The position numbers and the translations under genes are program-made. A DNA stretch of 64,000 nucleotides from Oculina patagonica (lineage: Eukaryota): the NCBI RefSeq assembly GCF_052425735.1, contig NC_135768.1, positions 23,250,001 to 23,314,000 on the forward strand, read 5' to 3'. Each line of letters starts with the position of its first letter. The stretch's first letter is position 1. Below, one piece after another: positions 1 through 59,728 of the stretch. A model generated the notes under the pieces. The model had not been told where the DNA came from. It did not search any database and was given only the letters and a program-made list of their open reading frames with translations.

Positions 1-145
1 GTGAATCTAATCGACTAAAAATCAGTTGCTTAAAATCATTTTGCTGTTAATGAGGGTCTTCCTAACATTGCTATACAACAACAACAGCAACAACAAAACA
101 AGGACATGTGAAAGTTTGAAGGTGAGCGGTGTTCTTTTCCCATGC

Positions 146-8097: not shown

Positions 8098-8326
8098 TAA
8101 GTGCTGTTGTTTATGAACCTCACAAAATTCAATAAATGTATTTAGCATCAATAGTATGCTTCAAAATCATTAATCAAAAGATGGGGAATACAAAGTAGAA
8201 AAAATCAATTCAAATTGATGCATAAAGCCAATGATTATCAAACACAACTCGAGAGGACCAGTAACGAGCTAAAATCTTTATTTTCAGGAACATTGTCAAC
8301 ACCTGTGCACCAAAGCAAATTTCAGG

Positions 8327-9367
8327 ATGCCACGGGGCTCTTCCAAGACATCTCGAAAACGCTCTTCCAAGACACCTCGAAAGCGCTCCTCCAAGACACC
8401 TCGAAAGTGTCGTGAATGCAAAGAATGTGGCAAATGGATTGATTCATCCCATTTTAAAGAACACGAAAGAACTCACACAGGAGAAAAGCCTTTCAAGTGT
8501 GATGAATGTAATAAGAGTTTTAGCAGTTCAGGCAACCTTTCTAAACACAAAAGAATACACACAGGAGAGAAGCCTTTTAAGTGTGTACACTGTGACGCAA
8601 GCTTTAGAGTGTTATTAGGCCTACAATCACACAGTAGAAAACACACAGGAGAGAAGCCTTTTAAATGTGAGCATTGCGACAAACATTTTAGGCACTCAGC
8701 AACCCTTAAAAGACATAGCAGGGTGCACACAGGAGAAAAGCCTTTTAAGTGCAAGCCTTGTGACAAGAGTTTCACGCAAGCAGGGCACCTTCAGAAACAT
8801 GAAAGATCACATACAGGAGAGAGGCCTTTTAAGTGCAGCCATTGTGACAAGTGTTTTTACCAAAAAATACAACTTCAACAACATACCATGATACACACAG
8901 GAGAAAAACCTTTTAAGTGTGAACATTGTGACAAGTGTTTTAGACATTCACTATCTCTTGTTGAGCATACTAGGATACACACAGGAGAGAAGCCTTTTGA
9001 GTGCAAGTATTGTGGCAGGTGTTTTTCCAAAGCCACAAACCTTCGGTATCATATTAGAATACACACAGGAGAGAAACCATTTAAGTGTGAGCATTGTGAC
9101 AAGTGTTTTGCTAGGAAAGGAAACCTTAAACAACATAACAGAATACATACAGGAGAGAAGCCTTTTATGTGCCCACAGTGTGGCCAGTGTTTTCGTCATG
9201 AAAAGTCCTTTCAAGTTCATCAAAAAAAACACCGTGAAACTGAGGTGCACTCTAGTGACATCCAATATGATGGTGTTGTAACTGAAGACATGCCAGGTTG
9301 TACAATTGAGCTGTTGGATTTGTCAGATGGCAATTGGCAGCCTAGCCATCCTTCAGAAACACTTTGA
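8327..9367 (+). CDS. C2H2 zinc-finger protein, 10 tandem fingers with TGEKPF linkers
   Basis: 346-aa ORF with ten C-x2-C-x(11-12)-H-x3-H units. Candidate acceptor at 8288 and candidate upstream exon 7630-7681 (AG|...|GTGAG), which could be UTR or extend the N-terminus in frame. Confidence 0.93.
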   Translation: MPRGSSKTSRKRSSKTPRKRSSKTPRKCRECKECGKWIDSSHFKEHERTHTGEKPFKCDECNKSFSSSGNLSKHKRIHTGEKPFKCVHCDASFRVLLGLQSHSRKHTGEKPFKCEHCDKHFRHSATLKRHSRVHTGEKPFKCKPCDKSFTQAGHLQKHERSHTGERPFKCSHCDKCFYQKIQLQQHTMIHTGEKPFKCEHCDKCFRHSLSLVEHTRIHTGEKPFECKYCGRCFSKATNLRYHIRIHTGEKPFKCEHCDKCFARKGNLKQHNRIHTGEKPFMCPQCGQCFRHEKSFQVHQKKHRETEVHSSDIQYDGVVTEDMPGCTIELLDLSDGNWQPSHPSETL

Positions 9368-16091: not shown

Positions 16092-17705
16092 TTATTTTTG
16101 TTCGTAGACTTTATCCTTCGTTGTTTGAACAACCGCCATAGAACCTTCAACATGTTCAATGCTATAGGTCCAGTCTTCAAAACCGTCAACCTGCAACGAC
16201 TCGTTCAGATCTTCTTCAAGCATTTTGGCGGGAAAAGTGGACCCTACGTCATCACCAAACTTGAGGCGCGCACGGTTGTACATCTGTTCAGCATGGGCAT
16301 GCAACTCAATAGGCACATTAAACTTGCGTGCCAGCTCGTAACCAAGATTTAAGTCCTTGCAGTGAAGGGCGATGGTAAAATCCGGGTCGAACGTACCATT
16401 GAATACCAGAGGTGCTTCTGTCTCCCAGGTGTAGGTATTTCCAGCGCTGAATCGTATAGCGTCAAAAAGAGATTTTAAATCCACGCCACCTCTTTTCCCC
16501 ATAAGCATAGCTTCTCCCATGGTTATAACATTGACAGCAGCGATCATGTTAGAAATCACCTTGGCAACCGTTGCAGTGCCCATTTCTCCCATGTAGAGGA
16601 CCATCTTGGTGCTCTGTTGAAGGATTGGGACACAATCCTGGAATAGCTGCTTGTCCCCACCTACAAGCACCGTCATTTTACCCTGCTTGAGAAGGGCCAT
16701 GCCTCCAGTTACAGGGGCCTCAAGAACTCTGATGCCTTTCTTACCTTAAAAAACGTAAAGTAAGCACAATATGACCTTTAGGACTCGGTATCTCGTGTAT
16801 TAAGGAGTAAAAAAGTTTGAAATTTTTAGCAAGGTTTTTACAGCTTTATAGAGGTGATCGCTAAATAGAGGTCATTCGCATCTGCAGGATATAAAAGGTG
16901 AAAATTCGACTTTTAGAGCTGACCGCTTAACAGACAATGGCCGGATAACACAGTTTCGCTTAAAGGGTCTGTGTAAGTGAATGTTAATATATGGATTAAA
17001 TGACAAAACCGAATTAAAGCTTCATTACCAACTAATATGTCTCCCCGTCCGGGCTAAAAAGTCATAACTAGCATTACACTCATTCTAAAACCAATATCGT
17101 AATCCGTTTTACTCTTTTTCAGTTTCTGTCCATCCGTTCCTTCTTTTGTATTTGCTGTGTTATTGAAATGTCTGTTCACTCTTTCAAGTGGCTCTTTGTA
17201 ATTTTCACTCAATTTGCTAGCCATTTTTTTATGTCTAAGTTTGGCTAATTTCCGTTACACAGTTCCTCTAATCTGCTACAGTTTTGACTGTGCCGTACAT
17301 ACCTGCCTGTTCTGCTAGCTCCAAAGTCTGCTGATAATCTGTTGTTGAATGATCAATCCACACTCCACCCGACCGTAACCCCGCCAAAACTCCATCCTCA
17401 CCCGTCATAACTTGTTTGACGTGCGGTGGAGCGGGAAGCGCTGTCATCACCACGTCACACATTGTAGCCAGTTCTCGTGGCGTGTCGGGACGAGGGATAT
17501 CCCTCGGGAGATACCGTCCCGCTTCTGGATTGTTATCAAGAAGGGCGCTTACTGTGTATCCTGATTTAAGGAGATTCTTAGCAACGGTCGAACCAACATT
17601 CCCTAAGCCAATGATTCCAATTTTCTGAGCTGCCTTAGTGGAGTACGCTGCACGCTGGTTGCCATAGCGACTAAGCAGAAAACGGAAAGCTGTTCTCCCA
17701 ATCAT
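16092..17705 (-). CDS. NAD(P)-dependent beta-hydroxyacid dehydrogenase (3-hydroxyisobutyrate dehydrogenase / tartronate semialdehyde reductase family), 2 coding exons, ~351 aa
   Basis: Exons 17705-17303 and 16744-16092, joined by a phase-1 GT-AG intron. Motifs: IGIIGLGNVG (Rossmann), WIDHSTT, EAPVTGG, catalytic Lys in AKVISN, FTIALHCKDL. Arg-rich N-terminus without acidic residues resembles a mitochondrial presequence. Confidence 0.9.
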
Positions 17706-18784
17706 ATTCTCGTTGCTGAGAGAAAAAAAGGGGTGTAGGGTTAGGGTGTTGCTAACAATTGCCTTGAATACTAAGAATTTGAGTATTAAGATAAAAAATA
17801 TATATTTTCAGTTAGAGTTATCTGTGAACACATTTTATCTCCTATTCCCCTTTCACTGCTTGAAGAAAACGCTTCAAAGGACTAACGCTTAGCTTTGCTT
17901 CCTCAGTCATCGAATTATTAACAATTATTCATCGAAGTGGAGGTGAATAGTCAACAGTTTTCTTGTAAAATCGCGCAGAATATTACCTGATTCTTAGTCT
18001 CAAAGGGACTATGTCACGGGGAATTCGCAGTTTTTTTGTCTAAACTGTTCTGTACTTGAAGTGGTAGGCAATTTCCCCCATCAAAAACACTGTCTTTGAA
18101 AATTTCGGTTAAACTTCGGTTATAAATATCGATTTTTTTGAAGGCGTGCGGAAGGGGCGTTCGGATCACGGACCGGATCACGAAAAATAAAAATAAAAAA
18201 ATAATAAAAATTAAAAAAAAAAAATAAATCATAAAATAAAATAAGAAAATAAACAAATAAATGGTTGTTAGTAATCGGCGTAACGGCGGAACGCGGAACG
18301 GCGTAAGGCGAGATTTTTTTTCTGTTTTTTTTTTTTTCTATAACTTAATTAATTTATTGCTATGTGCAAAATTAAATTAATAAATTCTCACCTTGCAGAC
18401 CAGCAGACAGCGGTACCTGGAACCTATTTCTTTTTCTTTATTTTACACACAATAGGCCGCAATATCGTTTGTGTCAGTTATATGATCTCTGGACTTAATT
18501 ACCTAAAACTGGGCAAAGAAACAAGCAAACAAACGGTAAATATGTCCCAAAAAAATAAAGAGCACCCACATCTTCTTAATCCTTCGAGGTCGATCTAGAG
18601 CCAGCCTTTTCTGAGTGAGGATTTCAAGGACAAGCGCGTCTGCCCTTATGAATTTTCTTGCCCCAATCGAGACAATGAAACGTACAAAGCCGAAGAAGTC
18701 AACGGAGCCGTTGGAAAAAACTAGAAGGGCCTGTTAAGTTACTTATTTCATCAAAAAAAAAAAGAAAGAAAGAGAATGAAAAAA

Positions 18785-18902
18785 AGCGCTGACTAGGGGT
18801 ATTTTCAGTTGGTCACCCATCCAAGTACTAACCCCGCCCAACAGGGCTTAACTTCGGCGATCGGAGAAGAACCGTTGCTTTCCATGTGGTATCAGAAAGA
18901 GC
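18785..18902 (-). pseudogene. 5S rRNA-derived sequence (left arm of foldback element)
   Basis: Minus strand has ATACCAC, CCGATCGCCGAAGTTAAGC (box A region) and AGTACTTGGATGGGTGACC (box C), followed by a T-tract. Ends are divergent from canonical 5S. Confidence 0.8.
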
Positions 18903-19020
18903 ACGTAAATCAGCTAGTAAAAGTTAAGACCAGTTTTAGCAGGAAAGTGCCAAATTGTACAAAGGATCCATTTAAACCAGGTATTACTTTTATAACCCTC
19001 TCTTATAACCGTCTGTCTTG

Positions 19021-19140
19021 TCTGACACTGATACCACAAGGAAAGCATTGGTTTTCGTCCGATCGCCGAAGTTAAGCCCTGTTGCGCGGGGGGTCAATAC
19101 TTGGATGGGTGACCAGCTGAAAATATATCTTGTTGTGGGA
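19021..19140 (+). pseudogene. 5S rRNA-derived sequence (right arm of foldback element)
   Basis: ATACCAC...GTCCGATCGCCGAAGTTAAGC...TACTTGGATGGGTGACC, followed by TTTTCATTTT. Confidence 0.8.
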
Positions 19141-21757
19141 TTTTCATTTTCTTTCTTTCTTTTTCTTACACAATCGGTAACTTTTCAGGCCTTGTTCGGC
19201 TTTGTACGTTTCATTGTCTCGATCGGGGCAAGAATGTCCGAAGGCCCGGCGAAGGGCAGTCACACTGTGCAGTCGCGTTTATAGCTTCTCCTTGAAATCC
19301 TCAAATCCTGGCTCTAGATCGACCTCGAAGGATTAATTATAAGAAGATGCGGGTGCCCTTTATTTCGTGGAATATATTTACTGTTTGTTTGTTTGTTTCT
19401 TTTTGCCCAGTTCTACGTAATCAGAAGTCCAGAGATCATATAAGCCGTAAACGACATTGTGACCTCAGTTGTGTGTGAAATAAAGAAAAGTAGGTTCCAG
19501 AGACCGCTGTCTGCAGGTCTGCAAAGTGATAATTTACTATTCATAGCAATAAATCAATAAAGCAATTCAAAAAAAAAAAAACCCCTTAACTACGCCGATT
19601 CTCGTTACGCCGTTCCGCGTTACGCCGTTACGCCGATTACTAACAACCATTTATTTGTTTATTTTTTTTTTTATTTTTTTATTTTTTTTATTTTTTTTAT
19701 TTTTTTTTTAATTTTTTGTGATCCGATCCGTGATCCGATCTGCGATCCGATCCGCGATCCGATCCGCGATCCGATCCGATTCGATCCGAGTTTTGTTAAC
19801 GCCCGTGCGGAAACAATTTGAAACCGTTGGCTAACGTTTTTTAAATCGCAATCCATTTCCATACGAGCCATCCGCAGCCAAACGCGCTTTTAAACAGTTT
19901 TAGTGTTCTAAAATGGCAATTGATAATACAAATGGACCATTTTTTTAGGTTTCCCACGGCTTAAATATTATTTTTGGCTGTTCAAAAATCTTTGAAAATC
20001 CGTGACAGACGGGGTACGAGGCCGAGCAAGCAGGAATCGTGAGTCACGCGAGTCACGCAAGCAGCGAGTGGTCTCATAACTGTAGCAATACATAGAGGTT
20101 TTCGGTCGACAGGTCCACGAAAACGAGCAAAAAGCAAAACAAGAAGTTTTAAAGGACCGTAGTAAGCCTCCGCAATTCTCGTACAGAAACAAAAGCAAAG
20201 GTGTGGCTGACTAGGGTCCTTTAACTCCATTATTCTTTCAGGTTTTTTGGAACACAAATGTTTAACGACACTTGTCAAACAGCAAATTTATGATAATACG
20301 TGTATTATGCTTGCGTGACAAAGCAGAAACATAAGAAAATGCCGGGCCTCTCACATTCTGTTGACATGTCACAATTGGTTCATTTGAAGTCAGACAAAGC
20401 GCGTGTCTGCCTAGAACTTCGCAAGTTTTATCTTTATCATTCTATTGTATATGTTATATATTGAAAATTCGATTTATAATGATTTGTATCGAATCGCAAC
20501 GACCATGTTATATAATAATAAGATGCATGATAAAGATTCATTTCAATTTTGTGAATAACTTACCGAATAATAACCATCATATATTCTTTGCGTTCTCATA
20601 CAAACCTGCATGAAACCTTTAAAAATAAATCATTAGCCTTGTATAAACACTTTTGTTCTTTTATATAACCGTTGTTTGCCTTTAATCTGTGTCTTGCGCA
20701 AGAAATCAATAGCGCATGCATGGCTTGCGCAACCGTGGTATAATTATTCGAAAAAAACACACAGAATGCTGCATTTACGCTGCCCTAGCGTTGAAAATCA
20801 AAAGTTCGACATCAATATCCAATGTCAAATTAGTTTCTTGCCTAATTAGACTCTAATAGTAAGGAGCCCTTAACCGGGAGGTACAGTATATCAAAAGTTA
20901 TTTAGCTTCATGAATTTGGTTGTATAAATTAAAATTCCCACACACCTTGTAAATTACAATTTTGTAGAAGTGAGTGTAGATCCTGCAACTGATCCTAACA
21001 GCTTGTATAGACTGAGAGATTTTGAAGCCCGGCCAGCAAAACAGCACAAATTAAAGACACATACAGGGTTCAGATACCGGTCTCTGTCACGCAACGCTAA
21101 GACAGTCTCGTCCCAGAGCCCGCGTTACTCTCAAGGGGAACGGTGGGCTCTGGGAACGAAATTGGTCCAGAGCAAATGTCTGTGAATGCTCAAGGCTTTT
21201 TTCAGAAAATAGCTACTACGCATGTATCGTCAAAACTTTTTCATTATCAGTTCAAAGGAAGGATATGCGATTATGCCAAATTAAAAAAAAATGAAATGAA
21301 ATATCAGTTGTAGCCAGTCCAATACAAATCTACCATTTTCCGGTGATTTAGGGAACGTTTGACTGGTTTATATTGAACAGTAAATACGACAGGTTTTTAT
21401 CTATCTTTTCCTTTGATCATGAATTGATAATGAAAAATATATAGGTATGAATGACCACAAAATTACTTGTGTCCTCCAAAAGCGTGACAGTCGAGGGAGA
21501 CTGGTTTTAACTTAAAGACACAGATGAGCTAATGGCCAAAGAGCGAAATACCTGTTTGTAGCCCACCTTGCTTCTAGTTTACGTTGCTTTTTACTAAAAA
21601 AATTAAGCTACTCGCTAGCTTATTTCGCTACTATACATTCAAAATAACTCCCAGTCCATTAAATTGAGTAATTTATTCACTATCAACACTTAGTTCATTC
21701 GGGAAGGCCTGCCTTTACTCGGGAAACTATTCATAAATATTAATAGCAATAATAATC

Positions 21758-23444: not shown

Positions 23445-26400
23445 TTATGCACTAAACGCTTCTTGGCAGGCCATAAGTGCATCCATGGCGTTCGGAGAGA
23501 TCCTGAGATTTTGTAGAGGAATACCAGAGAAGTCGTAATTATAATCCTTGTATGTGACCCATTTTCCATCATCTTCGCCTTTGGTGTGATGCCCGTCGTA
23601 TCTGCACACTCCAGACGAGTCCTGTTACGAACAAAACAAAACTTAAGTACATGTACTGGTGCATTTGAGACGTTGAAAAATTCTGACATTAGAATGCATA
23701 TTCTACAGTTAAAAGGGGCAGCGTGGATTTTTTCCGTAGGTATGGAAAGTCGAGTCAAATCTTCACGTCATAAATCAATTAATTAATTAATGAACGTTAT
23801 CTGGTTATGCGTAGGAAGAGGTTGCCCTCACGTGCCCGAGCCAGGGGGTCGTGTATAAAAACGCACGACAATAATAAGTAAAAAACAAAATTGCGGAGTC
23901 CCTCTAAAGAGACCCCGCAGCGTCACATCAACCCCCAAACGTGCAGTTCACCCTTTACAGGGACTATGTCACGGATTTAACCAGATTTTTGAACCGCCAA
24001 AATTTATATTTGCGTCGCATGAAACCTAAAAATAATAGTAGTCTATTTTTATTAAAAATGGCCATATTAGAGCACTGAATCTGTTAACTATCATCTTTGG
24101 CTGCGAATGGCTCGGATGGAAACGGATTGCAATTCGAAAAAGTTAGGCAAACGTTTTTAAATTGTTTCCGTGCGTCTTCAAAAAATCGATATTTATAGCC
24201 GTAGCTTGATTTCTATCCGCAAATTAAGATTACATCTTCATTTAGATGTTCAAAGATAATGTTTTATATGGTTTAAGTTGCCTACCACTTATTTCAGAAC
24301 AGTTTTGTCCAAAAAACTGTGAAATCCCCGTGACATAGTCCCTTTAACTCTTTCAATGGGTAAAACTCTTTTAACTAATTTGTACTGATCTGTCTGTGGA
24401 TTAAACCCAAATTGTAATTCTAGTCAAAGGAAAACTATTTAACAGTACTTTCATGCGGTACGGCTCACTGTGATCTTACTATTTGGTTTGAGTGAAATCT
24501 TTTTTTTTTAGGGTGTAACCATCCAAACGAAAGCTATTGAGCAGTTCTTTCATGTGGTTCTGTTAACGCCTGATGCAAGGGGTCGTTCTAACGTTTACCT
24601 CAGAAATGGAAACACTTATTGATGAAGTCCCTGAATGGACACACAGCAAATTGACATAAACCTCAGAATTACAAACCTTGTAGACGCGTGTGATGATCCC
24701 TTGATGAAATCTCATTCCGCCGATGTTGTTTCCTTCAGTAGCACCGTAACTTCCCTGAGGAAATAGTACGATGGAATCCACACCGACCTGGTCTTCACTT
24801 GGAATCTTATCGATAGCCACGTCCTGTAACCAAGAGAACACAAAGGTAACGCTATGTGGACATTTTTTGTTGTTGTTTTTCATTGTGTTTGGATGAAAGT
24901 TCTCAGTACTAAGTCTGTGGATGAAGACCCTGTGTGTGAGCATTCAAATGAAAGCTGTTGAGCAGTACTTTCATGCTGTACAAAGTGGTTCTGACTTTTA
25001 AGTTTGTGGACGAACTCTACTGAGTGACTATTTAAAAGAAAGCTTTTGAGACGTATTTTTATGAGGTTCTATATATTATGCTGTACAAGGTGGTTTTAAC
25101 TGTTAAGTATGTCGATGAAACCCTAGTGTGTGACCATTCAAATGAAAGCTATTGAGCAGTACTTTCAAATTTTACTGTTTAATATGTTGTACAAGGTGGT
25201 TCTAACTTTTGAGTCTGTGGATTATTCATAGAAAGCTATTGAATAGTTCGTTCATTTGGTACTGTTTGTTGTGCTGTACAAGGTGGTTCTAACTCTTAAG
25301 TCTGTGGATGAAACCCTAGTGTGTGACTATTTAAATGAAAGCTATTGAGCAGTACTTTCAGGAGGTACTGTTTATTATGCTGTACAAGGTGGTTTTAGCT
25401 TTAAAGTCTGTGAATGAAACCCTAGTGTGTGACTATTCAAACCCTAGTGTGTGACTATTCAAATGAGAGCTATTGAGCAGTACTTTCATGTGGAACTGTT
25501 TATTATGTTGTACAAGGTGGTTCCAACTTTTACTTCTGTGGATGAACCCTACTGTGTGACTATTCAAATGAAAGCTATCGAGACAAACTTTCGTGTGGTA
25601 CTGTTCATTCTACGTAGAAAGTTAAAAGTATCTAGATAAATCCCTTAACTGTGACTATTTACACGAAAGCTATTGCGTTTTGAGCGGAATCCTTATATAG
25701 CAGTTGTACACGAATTGTATACCTTGTAAGACTGAACTTTCCCTGTAGGATCTCCGTCGTCCCAGTCCACAGTGTAAGACATGGTCTCACGGTCAAAGCT
25801 CGCGATGGTCGCTCCGAAGTAAGCCGATCTTTGGTGGTGAGAGATCACGTGATCGCCTATTACAGGCGCGCGGTAACTTCCGGTTTCCTCCTTGAGGCCA
25901 AGCAAAGGTAAAATGGAGCCCCTGGAATTTGAAAAGAATCAATTTAATACACAGAACAGAAAGCGAATCTTGCACGTTTTAAGGTCGCGCAGGACCCTTG
26001 CTCATTAATATATTCATTAGCCAAATTTCTTGTTGGAGTGCTGTCTTGTAAAGCTTTAATTCACTACATTTTGAATATCGATTCCTCTAAAATTTAATAA
26101 GTATACCCAGGGATGATGGAATTACATCATGATTGTCCTTTTACTGAGAGATGACCGTTGTCTGTGATGTTACAAGCCCTTAAAAGTTTAACTGAAGATA
26201 ATGCGATTTTGTGTCCAAGTTTTCAGCTAGCACAGCGCACCAAATTAAATGATTATATAGCCTAGTGATAAGTCGTAACTTCTTTTGTGTTCCCACTAGA
26301 ACGAAATTTTCGATTTCAAAAACTGCTACAAGTTAATGGCTTCTAAGAGAGTAAAAATGTGAAATCTAAACTTTGAAACATGCTATCTTCATTTTGAGAA

Positions 26401-32400: not shown

Positions 32401-35400
32401 TCTAATCAATACCTTGTACACTTCCCAATCCATCAGGAACTTTTATCTGAGGAACACTCTTTTTGACAGCTTTTAGCAGCTCGGTCATTTTGGCATCCTG
32501 TACGTCCTTGTTGCTAAAGTGAATGTAAATTTCACCAGCGATAAGCAGCCCCACAACCGTCATCATCCAATCAAATGATCCGCTACCAACAACAACTGGA
32601 ATAACCGGTTTTTTAACAGTCTTCTTCGCGTACTGAAACTCTTGACGGCATATTTCATCCCTGCAAGGAAAGAAAGATGATCAACTCTGAGTTTCTTACA
32701 ACTTTTTTCAGTGTTCTCGGGAGTGGGGGGGGGGGGGGTGCTTAGGGGTGTAAATTATGAAGTTCAAATTTGCACGCAAGTCAACGCAATTTTTTCACAG
32801 TTCGGCCACCCAACGCAAGTGAACACATTTTTGCAATTTACTTCAAATACTGAATTGCACCTCGTAGCATTTTTAATGACTTTTTGCAAACTTGCGTGCA
32901 CACTAGAGAGTAAACTTGCGAGTCCGTATGGCCACCCAACTCAAGTCTGTACGCTCGTGTCATGTTGAATAATTTCTTCACTATTTATCACCGAGCTTAA
33001 ATTTACCATCTTTATTATTTACTACACATTTGATGATTTCGACATTGCTGATCCTAGCAGTATGCAGGACGCGTGTTACATATCAACCTAGTAAATGGCC
33101 CAGCTCACAACGAGTCTCTCGTAGCTCAGTTGGTTAGAGCGCCCAACCGGTGTCTGGGAGACCATGGGTTCGATTCCCGTCGGGGACTCGGATTTTTTCT
33201 TTGTCCCACGCTCGTGTCATGTTGAATAATTTCTTCACTATTTATCACCGAGCTTAACATTTACCATCTTTATTATTTACTACACATGTGGAACTTGCGA
33301 CCACTTGCGTTCCCGTTTGGTTAGTCCTCGAAGTCTTATGTAAAGGGCCCTAGGGAGCCACGCTTTCTTTTTTTTACATGCAGGATTTTAGGTATTATAA
33401 TTCTCATGTAGCGTGTCTAAACGAAACAGGTCACCGTGAAACTTCAAATTAACAATTGGTTCATGCTTAAGCATGTATCGCGTTATGGTGCACACAGTTT
33501 GGAGAGCCCAACCGAGAGCAACTCTAGCTCTTTGAGTGCTCTACAAACCTTCCAAGTGCACCATAACTCAATAGTCCACAGCTACAGTAAAAGCATGAAC
33601 CAATTACCCCATAAGCATCCCTGTCTGTTTCATATGGGAGTCCCTACTGGGGAGTGGATAATTTCTCATGTAGTTATTTGCTGAACCTTAACAGCATAAA
33701 ACTTCTATCACGGCTATGACATACCAAAATCACTACTTGTTCACTGTACTTACTGGACATATTCATCGCTGAGACAAGCCACAAACACCTTTGCTGTGTT
33801 AATCTGTTGCACAGTTTCAATCAGTGAGTCAGTCATTCGTTTTTCCTGATTAACCTTGGCCCCATACCCCTCCAGCTGACACCGGATGTCACGTGGATCG
33901 CAGATACTCGACATGATCGCTTCATCATAACTGGGCGGAGCCTCAGAAGGTGGCAACTCACAATTCCTTATGGCAGAAGGGCTGTTGGCCTGTTAATCAG
34001 ATAACAGATATTTTATTCACCTCTTTACAGCCAGTATTTTTGTGCAAAGATCCAATTTATGGATAGCAGCTACTGTGCACACTTTGGTACATGTGGTTAG
34101 TGAGGGGTGGGGAGGGTCGGGGTGTGACAGGAGGGTGGGAGCCCAGGAGAAAAGGGGTGGGAGGCGGGAAAGGAGAGGGTAGGAAGTGGGAGTCCAAAGG
34201 TGAAAGAACCAGGAGAAATTATACATGAAGAATTCATTGAAGTTTAACCATATTCCCATGCCATCGCACTTTTTCTTTTTTTGTATGTAATTTCTCAACC
34301 TCCTACCTTTCCTATTTAATGGTCCATACTAATCAGTTATAAAAGACTTTCTAAAGGCCCGTTCCAACATTAATTTCCCCATGTTGGTTTGTCACTCGCT
34401 CCTGACATCAAATTTGCCTTTTGAGGGTCGCGCTTGAGCAGCAAAAAAGAGGTCAACTTGAAGCAGGTCTACACACTGTACATGTATGTACAATTGTACT
34501 GTTCATAAATATATAGAACACAAATTTACAAACCTTTGTGTAAGAAATGAATATATCGCATGGGTTAATTCCACCGTCTACAGAGTTTTGTTGCTGATTA
34601 TTTCTTGCTGGCTCAGAGTCTTGAGCTGACAGAATGTCCAGTACATTGGGAGAGATGCGTAATTGAGAAAGCTCCATTCCATAAAAGTATAAACTGTAAC
34701 CCGAGTATGTGACCCACTTGTTGTCTAACTCTCCCTTAGTGTGTATACCGTCATAAACCTTCTGGCCTCTGTCACCATAATACACCTTAGTTATCCTTCC
34801 CTAAGTTAAACAAAATAATACAACTCATCTTCAGAATCCTTTTAGAAGAAAATTTTATTGTAAATACTTTACTCTCATGCTTCTAAAAAAGACCTATGCC
34901 CCTCATATGGAAGGCTTTTCAACACAAGTACCACTATAATATACCTCAATTTGGCATTTAAAACCTCCCACCCCCTCCCCCTCTTGCAACAAGAAACTCT
35001 TAAGAGCTTAAAACTGCGCTGGTCATGTGACCACTCAAGGGGAGCCATGTGGGGGGAATAAAAAATGCAGCCCCCCCCCCCCACACTATCCCCATTATGC
35101 GCGTCAAACTATGTTGTGACTGACAAACAGAATGATAAGAAAGACCTTGTGTGACATTTCATGGTTGACTAGTTCCATCTTAGTTTATGCTAATGCTGGC
35201 CAAATTCCCACGATCCCACGACGAAACGTCACTCAAGACAATAACAGAAGTTAATATGAGACCTATAATGTTCCGCCTGACTACAGACAGCAGATGGAGA
35301 GCAATTAATGTCTCAGTTATTGTTAGTACTATAGACCTTTTCATTTTGCAAAGGTCCATAACAGGGAGACGACCTTAAGGTAAGGTTTGGCCGTACCATG

Positions 35401-52362: not shown

Positions 52363-55300
52363 TTAAGGACTTGACATTTCAAGGCGACACAACTTGGTGA
52401 TTGGTCGGGTAAGAACAGTTCTCGTCACTTTGATTTCTCTTTCTCGTCGACGCTTTGCACGAGTCACAACAGTGCAACTTGTTAGCACCTTTGCAGAACG
52501 CACATATCCATCTTCACTCTCAAACACTTCCACAACTCGGGCTAATGGCCACTGACCTCTTGGGTAATTCTCATCTGCCAGAAGAACGAGTTCACCAACC
52601 TTAAGGTTCTCTCTCGGTTCATTCCACTTCTTTCGTTCTTGGAGGGTAGGAAGATATTCCTTAATCCACCGTTTCCAGAATACACTTGCTAAGTACTGCG
52701 CTTGTCTCCACTGTCGTCTACAATGCAAATCCTCCTTCTCAAAGATTCCAGGGGGCAAACTGGCACATGGTCGCAGCTGCAACAGATGATTTGGTGTAAG
52801 GGGTTCTTCATCCATTGGGTCATCACTATTTCGTGTTAACGGCCTACTGTTTAGAATGTTAGTTGCTTCTGTTAGAACAGTCGACAACACTTCATCGCAT
52901 ACCACCTGTTCTTTCAAAAGAGCCTTCAGGATTTGGCGTACAGACCTTATCATTCTCTCCCATGATCCCCCCATGTGACTTGCTGCAGGAGGGTTAAAGA
53001 TTCATTTGATACCTCTTTGCGCACAAAACCCACTGATTGTTTGCTGATTCCACTCGTTAACAGCATCCTTAAGCTCCTTATCTGCTTTGGTAAAATTTGT
53101 GCCACAGTCACTGCGAATCTCTTTTGGGTATCCTCGGAGGTTAATGAATCTCCTCAGTGCATTGATCATAGAATATGTATTCAGGCTATGTGCAACTTCC
53201 AAGTGTATAGCACGGACAGTTAAGCATGTGAATAGGCAACCCCAACGTTTAACTCGACTACTTCCTTGCTTCACCTCTATAGGCCCAAAATAGTCCACAC
53301 CAACATATGTGAAGGGAGGTTCATGTGGAGTAATTCTGTCTTCGGGCAACTTGGCCATAAACTGCTCTCCAGTGGGCGCTTTCCTTCTCTGGCAATCAAG
53401 ACACTTCTTTAACACACGACGCACTGCCGAACGTCCCTTTACAACCCAGAACCTTTCCCTCAGGGACGTCAGAACGGATTCTTGACCGAGGTGGCCAACC
53501 TTAATGTGATGATACTGGATAATCAGTTCTGTGACATGGTGGTGACTGGGAAGGATAAATGGATGCTTCAAATCTTCATCTATTGGAGCACACTCCAGTC
53601 TTCCACCAACTGACAACAACCCATTTCTCAACTTCGGATTCAACTTGAAAATCGAGGATCCCTCTTTCTTTATGACCCTCTTGATCTGTCGTTCACTTGA
53701 ACCAGACGACATGTTGACGAGTGCCTTGTACACATTTGGGAATGCCGACTTCTGCACCCGTCGAATTACTTCTTCTTCAGCCTTCTGAAGCTCAACGACT
53801 GTTAGGTTTCCAATTCTTACTTCTGGTTTGCCAGAAGGACAGCCATCATTAAGGGTAGCATCTTTCTTCTTACAAACTTTGCTTCGTATAAACTGCTTGT
53901 AGCGTAACAGCCAAGCGAATGCTCTCTTCAGTTTCCACCAGGAAGAGTAGTGATGTATCAAGCTGTCAAATGGATCTTGTGCTACACTAGTAGCATAAAT
54001 TCGACTTTCCTTTCTTACTTCAGCATCACTGTCCTTTAGCTCAGGTACTTCAATCATTGAAGGCCAGCAGTTTTCTTCTTTCCAGAGGAATGCAGGGCCA
54101 TTCAACCACCGACTATTCCTTGTCATGTCATCAAGCCTTAACCCTTTTGATGCATCATCTGCTGGATTGTCGTCTCGGTTGACATATCTCCAGTCTGAAA
54201 CGGATGATCCACTGCGAATGGCCGTGAGGCGATTTGACTCGAAGGTGTGGAACCGTTTAGAGTCATTGTTAAGGCATTTCAGCACTGTAGTAGAGTCAGT
54301 CCAATAATTCACTCGATCCACTTCAATTTCCAACTCTTCTCTGATTATTCCACTCAACTTAACAGAAATAACCGCGGCAGTTAACTCTAATCTCGGTATC
54401 GTTATTTCGTGAATGGGAGCCAATCGGGCTTTCCCCATAACAAAGCTGCAATGGATTTGGTCAAAGACATCAACAAGGCGTAAATAGGCTACTGCTCCGT
54501 ACCCCACACGCGATCCATCTGAGAAAATGTGCAGCTGAACATTCTTAATTTCGCCAAAATGCTTTGGTTTGAAGCATCGGTCAACTTGGACTTCTTCCAA
54601 CTTCAAAAGATCCTCCAGCCAATGAGACCACTGAACTTTGTCTTGTTCTTCTATCTCAGTATCCCAGCTCAACTTCCTCCGGCAGAGGTCTTGTAGTAAA
54701 AGTTTTCCTTTCATAACATAAGGGGCAATGAATCCTAACGGGTCAAACAACGAACTCACAAGTGAAAGGATACCACGTCTCGTCATTGGCTTTACCTTGG
54801 CCAGAGTCTGAACTTTGGTTGACACATCCCAGACAAACTTGTCAGCTTCTATACTCCACTTCAATCCAAGGGCACATGCAGTTGGCAAGTCTTCTATGTC
54901 TAGGTTAACTACAGAACTTGCTCTCTCACACTCAGGAATCTCAACCAGTACATCTCTGTCATTGCTAAGCCACTTGGTTAACCTAAACCCTCCTTTCTTC
55001 AGTAGCTCTCGTAACTGTGTTGACAACTTTATTGCGGTTTCAGGAGAAGAAACAGATTTCATCAGGTCGTCAACGTACATGTTTCTCATCACAGTCTGAA
55101 TTGTTTCAGGGTCAAACTCTTCCAGGTATGTCGACGCTGTCTTCTGTAGGCAGAAGTTGGCACAACTAGGCGAGGAGGTTGCACCAAACAGGTGTTTCAC
55201 CATGCGGTATTCTTTTGGTTCTTTCTCCAGGTCCCCATCAGGCCACCAAAGAAACCTCAACACATTGTTATCTTCGGGGTCAACATAGACTTGGTGGAAC

Positions 55301-58300
55301 ATAGCTTCTATATCGGCTGCAATAGCTATTGGCTCTTGCCGAAATCTAATCAACACTCCAACAAGCGGATTTGTCAAATCAGGGCCTTGCAATAATTGCT
55401 GATTCAAGGAGGTTCCACGATATTTCGCACCACAGTCAAATACAACTCTTACCTTCCCTGGCTTCAACGGGTGTGTCACAGGGTGATGTGGAAGGTACCA
55501 GACTGGTTTCCCTTTCAAATTCAGCTCTTCTGTTGGAACTTTCTGGGCATGACCTTTCATTATGTACTCTTGCATTGTGGTACGGTACTTCAGGAGTAGA
55601 TCTTCATCCTTAAGGAGTCGCTTCTTTAGAAGTTGTAACCTCTGTTCCGCCACAGGTCTATTGTTTGGTAGTTCTGGGCATCCTTGTCGCCATGGCAATG
55701 CAACTTGGAAATGCTCTCCAACTCTTTGTAGGGATTCCTCCATTTTGTTCAAGGCTAACTTGTCTTCAACTGATGGTGAGACTGTTGTCCCAATCACAGA
55801 GTCTCCAAAATTTGTCTTCCAAAGCCGTTCAAGTTGCTGGTGCAGGGTATCATTGTCAATGTCACAGTCAATTAATTCTTCCTTTTCTTCCTTTAACGGA
55901 GGGAGATTTACAACAGCTTGCTGCTCTAGCCTCTCGATGGGTTCCCTGTGCTCAAAATTGCCAACACTCTCTGACCACATTGCAGTTTCGAATTTCACCC
56001 CAGTTTTGTCAATTGCCTTAGTCGAAGGATTCTCATGCAAACAACATCCGCCCAAATCCATGTCATCCGCAGATGTAACTCGGACAAAGTTCACCGAACA
56101 ATGTTCATCTTCTTTGCATTCACCCATCGGACCTATCACTGTCCACCCCAGGCTGTAACGGATAGCTATTGGCTCGTCGATTGCACCAGCTTTAAACTCT
56201 AATGGGAGGAAGAGACTAGGCTTTTCTTTAAGACCAATCAGCAACAAAACTTCTCTATTTCCAACTTCGGGAATGTCAATGCCTCGTAGGTGAGGCCAGC
56301 AAGCAAGATCTTCTTTCTTTGGAATACAACTTGGAGAGATAGGCATCTGTGCGACTGTCTTTACACTCGGTAACTCCACCACAACTGACTCATCCATAGA
56401 CATTACAGTCAAGTCTACCACACGACTCTCCATCTGAGTTAAACCAGTCATTCCAGTCAGCGTAAAGTTAAGCCTTTCTCCTTCCAGCTCAAGTTTGTTA
56501 GCTAATCGTTCATGACACAATGTCACCTCTGATCCATTATCAAGAAGGGCATATGTCTGAATAATTTCGTTGCCCTTCCCTCGAACCTTAACAGGGATAA
56601 TTCCCAGACACACTCTTGTTTCTCCAGCCCCAGTAGCTGCCACAGCAATTCCATTTCCATCACCTGCCCCAGTAACGTCACCTGACCTAGCAGTCCCTTG
56701 ACTTGGTTGCAAATGTTGCTCTGCAATAGCAGCGGTTGCAAAGTTACTGTTTTGACTAGCAGTGTTTCTGTTCATACTGTTAAGGTCTCTTCGAATTCCA
56801 GCAGCGGGGCGATGCATCAGGGTATGGTGACTACCTCCACAACCAGGCCTTTGACACTTGAAATTTACTTTTGGGCACTCCTTGGCAATATGTCCCTTAA
56901 CTAGACACTTATTACACAGTCCACCACTTTGCACAATTTTCCACTTCTCTTCATAGGTGAGGCCTTTGAATTTACCACACTTCCAAATGTCATGCTGCTT
57001 TGTGCAAACTTGACAAGGCGCGGGGGCATCCACAAATTTCGATCCTCTAGCATTCTCGTTTTGACCATCGCGAGTTGGTCCAGTTCCAGTGGCAAATGCT
57101 GACAGGCTTGAGAAGTTTCCACTTTGATTCATTTTGTTTCTTTTAGGAGGTGTCTCCTTCAAAGTTCCAGTAACCATATCTCGGCCAAACTCGTTGTTCA
57201 CCAATTTAGCTCTTTCCTTGACAAATGCTACAAAGTCTTGAAACTTAGGTCTGCGGTCGGCTGCAATAATCCTCCCAGCACACTCGGTCCATCTCCCTCT
57301 TAGAAACATTGGCAACTTCTTTGCGAGCTCTCGCAAAGTGTTCATATGATTAAGATCAGACACATATTCAGCACCCATGCCGCTCAAAGTTCGATCTGCG
57401 GTGTCCAAATGTCTGCTGAGCTCCAACAACGAAGGTCCATCCACACTCTTCATACAAGGCAGATTCAACAACTTCTTAACATGAGCCTCCGCAATCACAT
57501 GCGGTTTTCCAAAGTTCTCCCGTAAGGTTTTTTTTGCTACTCGGTAACCATCGTTACGCAGATTTGAACAACTTTCAATAGCTTCCTTTGCCTTTCCTGT
57601 GCAGTGTTGTATGAGAAGTTGTAATCTCCTGGACTCATCAGGATTATCCCTTTCCAAATAGGTTTCAAAATTGTGCATAAAGGTGACGTACTTCAATGGA
57701 TCACCATCAAACCGATGATACTCAACCTTAGGTGAGGAAACTACCTGTCTCAAAGCCTTTACCATCTCTTGACCACTATCGAACTGCTCATTTGCTGGTT
57801 CTACTTTCACGACTGGCGGCACATAGGGTCGAGGCATCTGCCAAGAAGAGGACCAAGTTTCACTAACACGTTGTCTAACGGATGTCTGCCTGGGTTCAAT
57901 TTTTGGCAAGGAACTCCTACTTGTCACAAGGTTGGGAGGTGTACGCTGTGGGTTTCGCACAATGGGTGCCGGCGCGGTCGACACATTTCCAGCCGAAGTA
58001 GTCAACGCCGGAATAGAATCAGTTGGCTCCACAGATCCAGGACCAATTAAATCAACCTGCTCAGTCCTACGGGGTAAGGCTGGTCTCTGATTCGACAGGG
58101 TTGAAGTAACTATGGTTGTATTGTCTAAATGATCGTTCACACTGACCTTTGAGCTATCTGGAATTTTACTCCTTTGTGAAGGCTCTAAATAACCCAGGAA
58201 GGATTTCTCGCGTGATTGTTCCATGCTTTCCTCTTCATAAATCTGAAGAGAGACTGCCGCCCTTTCAGTCTCCATTTCTGCTTCTATTAGCTCCTTTTTC

Positions 58301-58944
58301 CTTCGAATTTCTTGCATTTCCTGTTCAAACTGCTGTCTAATCCCTAACTGTCGTAGATTCAATTGCGCCAGGGCCAATTTCTCCCTTTTTCTAGACACTG
58401 TAGACAATCTTGAACTCGACGTGGAAACCCCACTTCGTCTGCTCCTTTGCGTTCCGCGAGAAAACTCACTATAGTTATCTCCTCGTTCGGGTTCTCTGTC
58501 CTTGTACCATAATCGCACGGTGAAGTCGAGATTGAGCTTTCGTTGCAGCTGTTCATCGTATGTCTTCTGTTTCTGTTCCAAAACAAGGGTGTCCATAAAA
58601 GGATCCAATAATTTCAGATAACTTTCGTGAGCGTCCACGAATTTACGCCAAGATTCATCAAATCTCGCATATTCCTTCGACACATCTTCACGACTTGCAT
58701 CGCTTTCGGTAAGGTGAACAATTTCATTATAAACCTTCGTCAAATTTCCAATATGGGCGGCGCGTGATTTTTGAAGAGCGAGTTTCTTTTCGTTTAAGAC
58801 GCCTTCCCTGTCTTGCATAACACTAGCTTGTCTATCCCTTGTGCTTCTCCTTTCTTCCATTACAATTTCGTCGCTCGTACCATTAGCTGCGGTGTCAAAG
58901 AATCCATTCGCTTCCAGTGGCGATTCAGGTTGTTCGTCTGACAT
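52363..58944 (-). pseudogene. BEL/Pao gag-pol polyprotein with one in-frame nonsense codon in the integrase
   Basis: Probable ATG at 58944 (MSDEQ). Three Cys/His knuckles (CQVC..H...C, CNKC...GH....C, CQRPGCGGSHH), protease LLDNGS, RT YVDD, RNase H FSDGS, integrase GH..CLDC / GVDYFGP / RSDCG / WERM. TGA at 53004-53002 replaces the expected Trp in GIK(W)IFNPP, and the frame continues into ORF 52974-52363. Confidence 0.93.
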
Positions 58945-59040
58945 ATTCCGTAAACACAACAAATCGTTTCGCCGTTCGCATTCCACACAATCCACCAAAT
59001 TTCCAATTCCAATAATTTCCAAGGCGAAGGAGTCGAAAAC

Positions 59041-59728
59041 TGTTACACAGCCCAAGTGCTATGTAGTGATTCAAAGTCAAATTTAACGTCAAAAACTCAG
59101 AACTTTTAATACATGATACGATCCAGGTTTCAAGATTATGCACCTATCAATGTTAAGCCCGAGGGGGGGGGGGGGGGGGGTCGGGCAAGGGGTGGGGATT
59201 TTGACATTTTCTATAAAAAAATGTCAAATTCCCCACCCCCGGGACAAAATAATTGGTCAAAATCCCCATGAAAGGTGGTCAGATGTCCTTCAAACCTTCA
59301 TATACGACCCGAAAATCCCTACCCTGGGGCCATCACGTACGATCAAAATCCCTACCCTGGGGACCTACCTCACGATCAAATTCCCGTGGTTAGCCCGACC
59401 CCCCCCCCCCCCCTCAGGCTTAACATTGATAGGTGCATTACACTCTAACAATCCAGGTTCAGTTCAGGCATACCAACTATAGTTCAGGTTTTCTACAAAT
59501 ACAAATATGAACTAGCAAACATAGGAAACGAATCGAAGTACATGTAGGTACATTTTGCAAATAATATGACTCTTACCGACTGTTTCGTTAGGTCCAAAAT
59601 GCTCAACAAGGTAAAGAAATAAAAACAACATGGCGAATCCAAGCGAGAACAACGCACATGATTGGTCACGTGATGCAAATTCGTGATGTAATATAGGTCC
59701 GCACAACGTGCACGCAATGATAGCTACA
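59041..59728 (-). repeat. 5' LTR of the BEL/Pao element, interrupted by a MITE
   Basis: 688 bp minus the 302-bp insertion equals 386 bp, colinear with the 3' LTR. Confidence 0.95.
59139..59437. mobile_element. PIF/Harbinger-type MITE inserted in the 5' LTR
   Basis: TIR TGCACCTATCAATGTTAAGCC / GGCTTAACATTGATAGGTGCA. TTA TSD confirmed by the empty site in the other LTR. Related degenerate ends at ~40616 and ~28216-28236. Confidence 0.92.

What the first reader, a model, noticed from the sequence alone, without database searches (positions are those of the whole stretch)
18155..19804. Foldback DNA element carrying two outward-facing 5S rRNA-derived Pol III units in its arms
Seen: a ~1.65-kb element made almost wholly of two ~750-bp diverged inverted arms around a ~120-bp spacer. 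It has GGGCGTT termini and an 8-9-bp TSD, and it splits a smaller MITE whose intact copy at 23960-24342 confirms the insertion. Each arm's inner end holds a ~120-nt 5S-like sequence with box A and box C retained and a T-tract after it, while the surrounding arm sequence has drifted. Known: 5S-derived promoters occur in retroelements (SINE3, plant Cassandra); long TIRs with 9-bp TSDs indicate Mutator/foldback DNA transposons. I know of no description of paired 5S units inside DNA-transposon TIRs. Inference: a mobile cassette spreading TFIIIA/TFIIIC sites or variant 5S-like RNAs, and a source of long hairpin RNA if it lies in the dehydrogenase 5' intron.
Basis: partly seen in the sequence, partly recalled or inferred. 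Interest (0 to 1): 0.75.

Follow-up and report, generated by a model that had tools for sequence, protein, structure and literature searches.

The report
Coral foldback transposon carrying twin 5S units
This is an old copy of a non-coding, hairpin-shaped "cut-and-paste" jumping gene of a stony coral. Its centre holds two back-to-back copies of a captured 5S ribosomal RNA gene whose RNA polymerase III control boxes the family has kept far better than the rest of its sequence, an arrangement that the papers I could search report only for retroelements.

Summary
Window 18154-19804 (1651 bp) is a foldback element. It has an exact 8-bp flanking repeat GTGCGGAA (9 bp with one mismatch) and an empty-site paralogue of the interrupted MITE at 23967-24345. 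Two outward-facing Rfam 5S hits (63 and 53 bits) flank a 118-bp spacer.

The element is not single-copy. The genome holds a clade of foldback families with at least four terminus types, over 100 termini each for two of them, and 8-, 9- or 10-bp TSDs that differ at every independent insertion (two sets of copies share flanks and were counted once). All share a ~700-bp core with the divergent 5S pair.

Between the two deepest groups, 5S nt 11-100 (boxes A, IE, C) is 93% identical against 56% for the downstream arm (p=5e-12). All 50 units examined keep a T-run terminator, while helix I has decayed. So the promoter, not the rRNA, is what is kept.

TSD lengths, long composite arms and terminal sub-repeats match Mutator/Foldback elements such as Tm1. 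Pol III transcription is untested.

The element lies upstream of the dehydrogenase's first coding exon; an intron location is not shown. This scan noted the same family on five other windows. It is a new variant of known kinds.

The parts
18146..18153 (.). left target-site duplication GTGCGGAA
   Evidence: the empty-site paralogue has a single GCACGGAA
18154..19804 (.). whole foldback element (1651 bp)
18154..18182 (+). left terminus GGGGCGTTCGGATCACGG... (W-type terminus XGGCGTT)
   Evidence: 104 genome hits to the W-type terminus
18183..18262 (.). A-rich tandem sub-repeats of the left arm
18263..18311 (+). inner terminus layer: GGTTGTTAGTAATC followed by CGGCGGAA-type sub-repeats. The same motif is the true terminus of the L030-type family (9-bp TSD)
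18655..18698 (.). conserved arm block (left copy), 95% complementary to 19191-19234 and conserved across subfamilies; role unknown
18780..18786 (-). T7 run directly after the left 5S unit (Pol III terminator-like)
18785..18902 (-). a-type 5S-derived unit (63.1 bits)
18903..19020 (.). 118-bp asymmetric spacer (loop of the foldback). It holds a block conserved between families (18963-18982) and TATAA motifs at -30 and -17 of the right unit
19021..19141 (+). b-type 5S-derived unit (53.3 bits; 2-nt insertion in the IE region)
19141..19150 (+). TTTTCATTTT after the right unit (terminator-like)
19191..19234 (.). conserved arm block (right copy)
19591..19648 (-). right inner terminus layer (CGTTACGC sub-repeats, ...GATTACTAACAACC)
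19650..19717 (.). T-rich tandem sub-repeats of the right arm
19720..19789 (.). GATCCGATCCGC tandem sub-repeats (4.9 copies) next to the right terminus
19790..19804 (-). right terminus ...GTTTTGTTAACGCCC
19805..19812 (.). right target-site duplication GTGCGGAA
18002..18153 (.). left half of the interrupted host MITE
19805..20007 (.). right half of the interrupted host MITE
23967..24345 (-). uninterrupted paralogue of the host MITE (empty site)

Best explanation
SHOWN. Window 18154-19804 is an old, non-coding (non-autonomous) copy of a cut-and-paste foldback DNA transposon of a stony coral. It belongs to a clade of foldback families that share a ~700-bp core. In that core two 5S rRNA-derived units lie head to head around an asymmetric ~120-bp spacer and point outward into the arms. 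The units descend from the coral's major 5S gene type (82-85% identical), and in the younger G-type families they include its 3' flank TCC+T-run. They are no longer rRNA genes: helix I has decayed. The internal control region (box A, IE, box C) and the T-run terminator have been kept through the radiation of the families, while the arms and termini changed.

INFERRED. (1) A complete 5S gene was captured at the DNA level, as Mutator-like elements capture host fragments, and was mirrored when the element became a palindrome. (2) The transposing lineages were selected to keep the Pol III promoter. The likeliest reason is that a TFIIIA/TFIIIC/Pol III-bound centre keeps the element in open, barrier-type chromatin and so keeps it mobilisable; less likely, its short transcripts serve the element. 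(3) The families are mobilised in trans by a Mutator/Foldback-type transposase, given the 8-10-bp TSDs. (4) New terminus types arose by palindromic extension, in which one arm plus its flank is copied onto the other side. This accounts for older termini lying buried inside younger arms with mirror-image flanks and no TSD.
For: Mobility: the empty-site paralogue and TSD. Eight further W-type insertions have different TSDs, 9 bp in six and 10 bp in two; L006/L007 share flanks and count as one. 18 of 20 fetched G-type copies, plus three more, carry different 8-bp TSDs, one with a mismatch. Pattern counts: 184 G-type termini and 104 W-type termini, with 0 control hits.

Shared core: the window element aligns to a G-type element only over q377-1080. 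35 Rfam 5S hits in 20 loci are almost all paired (-,+).

Origin from the major 5S gene: identity matrix and shared 3' flank. Substitutions at nt 62 and 92 are shared by both arm types, with no sign of conversion from the genuine gene.

Promoter kept: across 50 arms, identity is 0.85-0.95 at nt 11-90 against 0.3-0.6 in the spacer and distal arm. The consensus of the W group against the G group is 84/90 identical in nt 11-100 against 146/260 downstream, Fisher p=5e-12. Box A has 1 fixed change, IE a median of 0, box C 2 fixed changes, and a T4+ run follows 50 of 50 units.

Not an rRNA: helix I is only 62% paired and RNAalifold does not recover the 5S fold.

Foldback/Mutator likeness: tandem sub-repeats in the arm ends. 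Tm1 of root-knot nematodes is a Mutator/Foldback family with composite TIRs and 8-10-bp, mostly 9-bp, TSDs (PMC3169594).

Layered termini with mirror-image flanks.

Literature: a 2024 review lists 5S-derived modules only in SINEs, Cassandra and Ajax (PMC10946416).
Against: No transposase-coding partner with these termini was found. No PF10551, PF20700, PF05699, PF00872 or PF12762 match lies inside the five long copies with W termini or near any listed terminus. Those copies could not be fetched. The G-type family makes strictly 8-bp TSDs with a weak T2/A7 bias that would also fit hAT.

No evidence of Pol III transcription: the public runs are contigs of a related organism and show only pieces that cross the spacer. 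Within one family the 5S part is only modestly better conserved than other parts, and the termini are equally conserved. A second arm block (18655-18698) is also conserved, so not all conservation is about Pol III. The window copy itself is worn: the right unit has a 2-nt insertion between box A and box C, and the arms are 71% alike.
Confidence: 0.7

Rival explanations
1. The 5S units are passive cargo, like the gene fragments in Pack-MULEs. They were captured once and inherited, and the transposon has no use for them. Their better conservation reflects something other than selection for Pol III function, for example a binding site for the transposase or a host factor that happens to overlap, or a low local mutation rate.
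For: No transcription data. Other arm blocks and the termini are also well conserved. Within one family the 5S excess is small. Single-5S derivatives (L025-L029) also spread.
Against: The conserved stretch coincides with nt 11-100 and peaks at nt 51-90, which is the internal control region. The RNA's own ends decay. The terminator T-run is kept in 50 of 50 units. The pair survives four changes of terminus type.
Confidence: 0.25
2. The families belong to hAT or another superfamily, not Mutator/Foldback, or different terminus types are served by different superfamilies.
For: G-type copies carry an 8-bp TSD (21 of the 23 examined; two showed none), with T at position 2 in 10 of 20 and A at position 7 in 11 of 20, which is the hAT-like nTnnnnAn pattern. 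No MULE or Mutator Pfam hit lies near any terminus.
Against: The window's own terminus family makes 9- and 10-bp TSDs, which hAT does not. Termini start with G-runs, not the hAT YARNG. No hAT dimerisation-domain hit lies near the termini either, although only 150 of 386 candidates were scored. Merlin (PF12762) hits are not near them.
Confidence: 0.2
3. The structure is a local accident: two independent 5S-SINE insertions or a local inverted duplication, not a mobile unit.
For: None beyond the first impression of two 5S-like pieces.
Against: Hundreds of copies have the same architecture, and independent insertions have distinct TSDs. An empty-site paralogue exists. There is no LINE-type tail or poly(A).
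Confidence: 0.01
4. The units are working variant 5S rRNA genes that the host uses, dispersed by a transposon.
For: Rfam scores exceed the gathering threshold. Promoter and terminator are present.
Against: Scores are 46-78 bits against 117 for the genuine array. Nine of the first ten nucleotides differ, helix I is only 62% paired and helix V is degraded. The genuine genes sit in tandem arrays.
Confidence: 0.03

Closest known systems
Tm1, the Mutator/Foldback family of root-knot nematodes (PMC3169594)
   Same: Composite inverted arms of variable length with internal repeats. TSDs of 8-10 bp, mostly 9 bp, with no target consensus. Many non-coding and MITE-like derivatives. One subgroup carries a small captured RNA-related motif (a histone hairpin).
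   Different: Tm1 has transposase-coding members (Phantom type); none was found here. Tm1 carries no Pol III gene. Here a complete 5S unit with promoter and terminator sits mirrored at the centre.
Drosophila Foldback (FB) elements and FB-like elements such as Galileo (PMC3573991, PMC3688188)
   Same: The element is almost all inverted arms. The arm ends are built of short tandem repeats. Size varies between copies.
   Different: FB arms are mostly sub-repeats, whereas here most of the arm is unique sequence. Galileo belongs to the P superfamily, and I recall its TSDs as 7 bp (from memory, not read in the cited papers). Neither carries 5S units.
Cassandra (plants) and Ajax (nemerteans), TRIM retrotransposons with 5S in their LTRs (PMC10946416, PMC10886601)
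   Same: A 5S-derived unit with boxes A, IE and C and a terminator, present twice per element because it lies in the terminal repeat, and conserved through the family's spread.
   Different: Those are retroelements with direct LTRs (and, from general knowledge, PBS/PPT and ~5-bp TSDs). Here the repeats are inverted, the TSDs are 8-10 bp and nothing suggests reverse transcription.
5S-derived SINEs (SINE3, AmnSINE1, 5S-Sauria, HaSE3; PMC10946416, PMC3272025)
   Same: The 5S internal promoter is retained best, and the ends of the rRNA are lost.
   Different: In SINEs the 5S head is at the 5' end and drives the RNA that is retroposed, with a LINE-type tail. Here each unit ends at its own terminator and is not needed to copy the element.
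Pack-MULEs and gene capture by Mutator-like elements (PMC6446971)
   Same: Host DNA is taken up between long TIRs and spread as part of a non-autonomous element.
   Different: Pack-MULEs carry Pol II gene fragments that decay. Here the cargo is a whole Pol III gene, mirrored, and its promoter is conserved across families.

Membership tests
Foldback-type (FB-like) DNA transposons (a structural class) | Element made almost wholly of two long inverted arms around a short loop | tested here: met
   Arms 18154-18902 and 19021-19804 with a 118-bp loop. The same holds in more than 25 other copies.
Foldback-type (FB-like) DNA transposons (a structural class) | Short tandem sub-repeats in the outer arms | tested here: met
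   GATCCGATCCGC x4.9, CGGCGGAA x3.6 and A/T-rich units. 7-bp repeats occur in the arms of L026/L028.
Foldback-type (FB-like) DNA transposons (a structural class) | Flanked by target-site duplications; empty sites exist | tested here: met
Mutator (MuDR/MULE, including the Phantom/Foldback clade) | TSD of about 9 bp (range 8-10/11) | tested here: met
   W-type: 9 bp in 6 copies, 10 bp in 2, window 8-9. L030-type: 9 bp. G-type: 8 bp. Compare Tm1.
Mutator (MuDR/MULE, including the Phantom/Foldback clade) | A MULE-domain transposase encoded between the same termini in autonomous members | tested here: inconclusive
No PF10551, PF20700 or PF00872 hit lies within or near any listed terminus pair. The five long copies could not be fetched.
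hAT superfamily | Strict 8-bp TSD and YARNG termini | tested here: not met
   W-type TSDs are 9-10 bp. Termini begin GGGGCGTT, GGGTGACC or GGTTGTTAG. Only the G-type TSD length (8 bp) fits.
5S-derived SINE (SINE3 type) | 5S head at the 5' end, LINE-derived or A-rich tail, variable-length TSD, no TIR | tested here: not met
   The units lie at the centre, each is closed by its own T-run, the element has TIRs and the TSDs are of fixed length.
Cassandra/Ajax TRIM | 5S unit inside direct LTRs, with PBS and PPT | tested here: not met
   The repeats are inverted, not direct. TSDs are 8-10 bp.
Genuine 5S rRNA gene (RF00001) | Score above the Rfam gathering threshold | tested here: met
   63.1 and 53.3 bits against 38. 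The genuine genes score 117.
Genuine 5S rRNA gene (RF00001) | Intact helix I and overall fold | tested here: not met
   Helix I is 62% paired over 47 units and part of helix V 39%. RNAalifold does not recover the fold.
Type 1 Pol III promoter unit | Box A, IE and box C at the right spacing, followed by a T4+ terminator | tested here: met
   By sequence only. Box A 1/15, IE 0/6 and box C 2/18 changes in the left unit; T-run in 50 of 50 units. The right unit of the window has +2 nt in IE.
Type 1 Pol III promoter unit | Actual TFIIIA/TFIIIC binding and transcription | not testable with these tools
   The runs on offer were contigs of a related organism.

The most novel reading that the evidence does not exclude
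A lineage of cut-and-paste (Mutator/Foldback-like) transposons has domesticated a host Pol III gene as its own module. The twin 5S units are active TFIIIA/TFIIIC/Pol III sites, kept by selection because they protect the element from silencing or mark it for its transposase. The families also renew their termini by palindromic extension, copying one arm plus its flank onto the other. That would be the first DNA-transposon counterpart of Cassandra and SINE3, and a new route by which Pol III sites (possible insulators) are scattered through an animal genome.
Probability: 0.35. Interest if true: 0.8.

Novelty: new variant of a known kind. Interest (0 to 1): 0.6.

Why it matters
5S-derived promoters are known as engines of retroelements (SINE3, Cassandra, Ajax), where Pol III makes the RNA that is copied. 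A DNA transposon does not need such a transcript. Long-term retention of the promoter boxes and terminator in a foldback family therefore asks for another benefit, such as chromatin opening, a barrier function, nuclear positioning or small RNAs. That benefit can be tested directly in corals with Pol III/TFIIIC ChIP and small-RNA libraries.

The family also places a few hundred potential TFIIIC sites near genes; here one lies 0.4 kb upstream of a dehydrogenase gene. It inflates apparent 5S pseudogene counts in coral annotations. The layered termini offer a concrete model for how foldback elements acquire new ends.

Tried and rejected
1. Autonomous partner. I looked for terminus pairs several kb apart. 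Among G-type copies, L061 (4.8 kb) holds a nested reverse-transcriptase fragment, and L062-L064 (3.0-7.4 kb) have no transposase ORF; L064 holds another inverted repeat. Five long W-type pairs were located by coordinates only. Coordinates of PF10551, PF05699, PF20700, PF00872 and PF12762 matches fall in none of them and near no listed terminus.

2. L002 looked like a 3-kb copy, but its two termini have no matching TSD, so they are probably two elements.

3. Homology of the spacer to the genuine gene's upstream region. An 11-mer (CTGGTTTAAAT) is shared, but at a different distance, and the alignments are gappy. I make no claim from it.

4. RNA-level selection. Covariation on the canonical 5S structure is marginal (0.134 against 0.121 shuffled) and confined to the decayed helix I. 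I make no claim from it.

5. Expression. The only runs on offer are contigs of a related organism (exons ~93-95% alike). They show spliced dehydrogenase mRNA, 'empty' MITE copies and family pieces that cross the spacer, and nothing that shows unit-length transcripts.

6. Other RNA families in the element: none. Bacterial-type promoter and terminator scans are irrelevant here.

7. Dada, the small-RNA-gene-targeting DNA transposons (PMC3706591). There the transposon sits inside the RNA gene, which is the reverse of this arrangement.

8. The a/b arm types as two old clades. The tree groups arms by family group first, so only the centre is old and asymmetric.

9. In one search I read the first coding exon of the neighbouring gene. 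I also printed a joined two-exon reading in a local script.
Full report
WHAT IS IN THE WINDOW

A self-comparison gives one inverted alignment of about 1.58 kb at 71% identity. Rfam's 5S model matches twice above its gathering score of 38 bits: 18785-18902 on the minus strand (63.1 bits) and 19021-19141 on the plus strand (53.3 bits). Both matches are full length, and they face away from each other across 118 bp.

It begins GGGGCGTT and ends AACGCCC. It is flanked by the exact direct repeat GTGCGGAA at 18146-18153 and 19805-19812.

The flanks (18002-18153 and 19808-20007) align without interruption to 24345-23967 on the minus strand. That is a second copy of the same small MITE, and it carries a single GCACGGAA at the site. 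So the insertion and its duplication are proven for this copy.

A T7 run follows the left unit and TTTTCATTTT follows the right unit.

IT IS A FAMILY, AND MORE THAN ONE

The assembly is a 529-Mb coral genome. It holds many relatives. There is one near-full copy at 86% identity. A set of about 1.4-kb copies has a shortened left arm. There are single-5S derivatives and more distant 1.3-2.3-kb foldbacks. In 20 loci Rfam finds 35 5S hits, nearly always as a (-,+) pair 230-250 bp apart.

Four terminus types were seen.

- W-type, X-GGCGTT(G/A)ACAAAACC. This is the window's type. It has 104 genome hits at up to 2 mismatches and no control hits.
- G-type, GGGTGACCCTATTCGG. It has 184 hits.
- L030-type, GGTTGTTAGTAATC.
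- L057-type, GGAGTTTGATCG.

TSDs differ at every independent insertion that has one. Two sets of copies share flanks: L006/L007, and the C6 cluster with its C1078 haplotig. These are segmental duplicates and I counted each set once. TSD lengths are fixed per type:

- G-type: 8 bp, seen in 18 of the 20 copies fetched (one with a mismatch; two showed none) and in three more copies.
- W-type: 9 bp in six copies and 10 bp in two.
- L030-type: 9 bp.
- L057-type: 8 bp.
- The window copy reads as 8 bp exact, or 9 bp with one mismatch.

An element-specific 5S box-C variant 21-mer occurs 149 times exactly, and a box-A variant 29-mer occurs 154 times at up to 1 mismatch. Both have zero control hits. The clade therefore has at least a few hundred members. 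Its copies are 8-30% diverged from each other, so it is old.

WHERE THE 5S UNITS CAME FROM

The genuine 5S genes form a tandem array with a 2005-bp period on C1 (117 bits). A second gene type with a 518-bp period lies on C10. The element units are 82-85% identical to the C1 type and 70-76% to the C10 type.

Similarity covers 5S nt 11 to the end. In the younger G-type families it runs on into the gene's own 3' flank, TCC followed by the T-run. That points to capture of the gene as DNA.

Both units of every element share substitutions that the genuine gene lacks (T at nt 62, A at nt 92). No unit carries the genuine state there, so they descend from one captured copy and are not being converted by the rDNA.

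The two units differ mainly in their first ~30 nt. The a-type reads GCTCTTTCTGAT...CATGG and the b-type reads GTCTG..ACTGAT...CAAGG. This a/b difference is shared by the W and G groups.

A tree of the arms, however, groups them by W or G first and by a or b second. So the centre (the spacer plus the 5' ends of the units) is old and asymmetric. The arms outward from it have been homogenised within lineages. L070, L076 and L066 show recent arm-to-arm copying.

WHAT IS CONSERVED

Over 50 arms from all subfamilies, mean pairwise identity is:

- 0.85-0.95 for 5S nt 11-90, highest at nt 51-90;
- 0.42-0.58 for the two ends of the 5S;
- 0.3-0.58 for the spacer;
- 0.3-0.85 for the downstream arm.

Taking one consensus per deep group avoids counting relatives many times. 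On that basis nt 11-100 is 84/90 identical, against 146/260 for the downstream arm (Fisher p=5e-12) and 60/80 for the best downstream block (p=0.001).

Against the genuine gene, box A carries one fixed change, IE a median of none, and box C two fixed changes at its 3' edge. A run of four or more T starts at the 3' end in 50 of 50 units.

By contrast, nine of the first ten nucleotides differ. Helix I is paired in only 62% of cells, and RNAalifold does not recover the 5S fold.

So what the family keeps is what a type 1 Pol III promoter and terminator need, not what a ribosomal RNA needs. This is a sequence-level inference. Within a single family the excess is modest, and the termini are just as conserved. 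One further arm block (18655-18698 and 19191-19234) is also conserved for unknown reasons.

WHICH KIND OF TRANSPOSON

These features match Foldback-type elements of the Mutator superfamily:

- long composite arms;
- short tandem repeats near the ends (GATCCGATCCGC x4.9, CGGCGGAA x3.6);
- G-rich termini;
- TSDs of 8-10 bp with 9 most common in the window's own family.

The closest described case I could read is Tm1 of root-knot nematodes. It has FB-like composite TIRs, 8-10-bp TSDs (mostly 9 bp), many non-coding derivatives and a Phantom-type transposase (PMC3169594). hAT is excluded for the W-type by the 9-10-bp TSDs. The G-type's strict 8 bp and weak T2/A7 bias leave hAT open for that type alone.

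I could not find a coding partner. The larger G-type copies hold nested repeats. No MULE, Mutator, hAT-dimerisation, IS256-type or Merlin Pfam match falls inside them. The first-look filters of that tool are loose and partly unscored, so these blanks are weak.

I could not test that.

LAYERED TERMINI

The L030-type terminus is a working end with its own 9-bp TSD in L030. It also lies inside the window element, 109 bp from each end. The G-type terminus likewise lies inside the 2.3-kb L057 foldback. In both cases the sequences just outside the inner termini are mirror images of each other, not direct repeats.

So these are not nested insertions. The simplest reading is that one arm together with its flank was copied onto the other side. 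If the flank held the end of another element, that gives the foldback a new pair of termini. This is inference. It would explain why one core travels with several terminus types.

CONTEXT AND EXPRESSION

The neighbouring minus-strand gene encodes a 3-hydroxyisobutyrate-dehydrogenase-like protein. Contigs of public runs join 16741 to 17300, with GT..AG on the minus strand, and stop at 17717. The exon 17302-17717 holds the start codon, followed by what looks like a presequence. The element therefore lies 437 bp upstream of the first coding exon. An intron location, and hence hairpin RNA from host read-through, is not shown.

The runs come from a related organism: exons are about 93-95% alike, and the tool's label of RNA is a guess, although the runs contain the spliced form. 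They contain 'empty' copies of the host MITE and family pieces that cross the spacer. Neither says anything about Pol III transcripts.

COMPARISON WITH WHAT IS KNOWN

A 2024 review of rDNA-TE links lists 5S-derived modules only in SINEs, Cassandra and Ajax, all of them retroelements. Its only DNA-transposon case of rDNA-derived sequence is Pokey with IGS sequence (PMC10946416). The Ajax/Helenus paper does not mention DNA transposons. Three further full-text searches found no 5S-carrying cut-and-paste element. Repbase and Dfam could not be consulted.

This scan has noted the same family on five other windows of this genome. I file it as a new variant of known kinds (foldback/Mutator-like element, gene capture, 5S-derived TE module), not as a new category.

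LIMITS

- No transposase link.
- No transcription or binding data.
- No other coral genome to compare.
- Copy numbers are lower bounds from exact or near-exact patterns.
- The 141 N in the window were left alone.

Noticed in passing
L030:1388-2521; window 18263 and 19648; L057:919-2399 within 491-2827: Layered termini. The working terminus of one foldback family lies buried inside the arms of another, and the sequences just outside it are mirror images rather than a TSD. This suggests that foldbacks grow and gain new ends by copying one arm plus its flank onto the other side.
   Followed up: partly
G000 C6:38484928-38490245; C1:48910198-48913231 and 48939858-48942470: Element-type 5S motifs in regular tandem arrays near chromosome ends. 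On C6, (-,+) pairs 251 bp apart repeat every ~2522 bp, at least 3 times. On C1, same-strand units alternate at ~850 and ~1306 bp. The foldback or its core may have seeded a subtelomeric satellite. Seen by coordinates only.
   Followed up: no
G000 C4:28206293-28213569; C7:19820674-19827945; C13:14081086-14088347: Three pairs of inverted W-type termini, each ~7.27 kb apart and on different chromosomes. They are candidates for full-length relatives of the window's family.
   Followed up: partly
L031-L047 (C1:45.94 Mb, C1187) and L050-L053 (C10:9.46 Mb): The coral has two genuine-looking 5S gene types: a major array with a 2005-bp period (117 bits) and a second array with a 518-bp period (94-96 bits, 88-89% identical). 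This is reminiscent of dual 5S systems in other animals. A CCHC zinc-knuckle ORF lies in the spacer of the major array (L031:1-1029).
   Followed up: partly
window 16095-17717 (-): A 3-hydroxyisobutyrate-dehydrogenase-like gene (NAD_binding_2 and NAD_binding_11). Public RNA contigs support the intron 16742-17301, and the start codon lies near 17705.
   Followed up: partly
window 52366-59058 (-): A BEL/Pao-type LTR retrotransposon with an uninterrupted 2018-aa ORF (DUF1759, RT, Peptidase_A17, integrase zinc domain) followed by a DUF5641 ORF. It is probably young.
   Followed up: no
window 8273-9364 (+): A 364-aa ORF made of C2H2 zinc fingers.
   Followed up: no
window 33118-33184 (+): An Rfam tRNA hit (39.5 bits), inside the span of the TIR/Tudor gene noted by another reader.
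   Followed up: no
window 18002-18153 + 19805-20007; 23967-24345: The interrupted host element is itself a multi-copy MITE of ~380 bp. Contigs of related-organism runs cover it at very high summed depth, and many of them join across the insertion site.
   Followed up: partly
L008-L016 (C6:5.84-6.74 Mb and C1078): Four W-type copies on C6 share the same left flank, so they lie in a segmental or tandem duplication. Contig C1078 repeats them base for base and looks like an unmerged haplotig of that C6 region.
   Followed up: no
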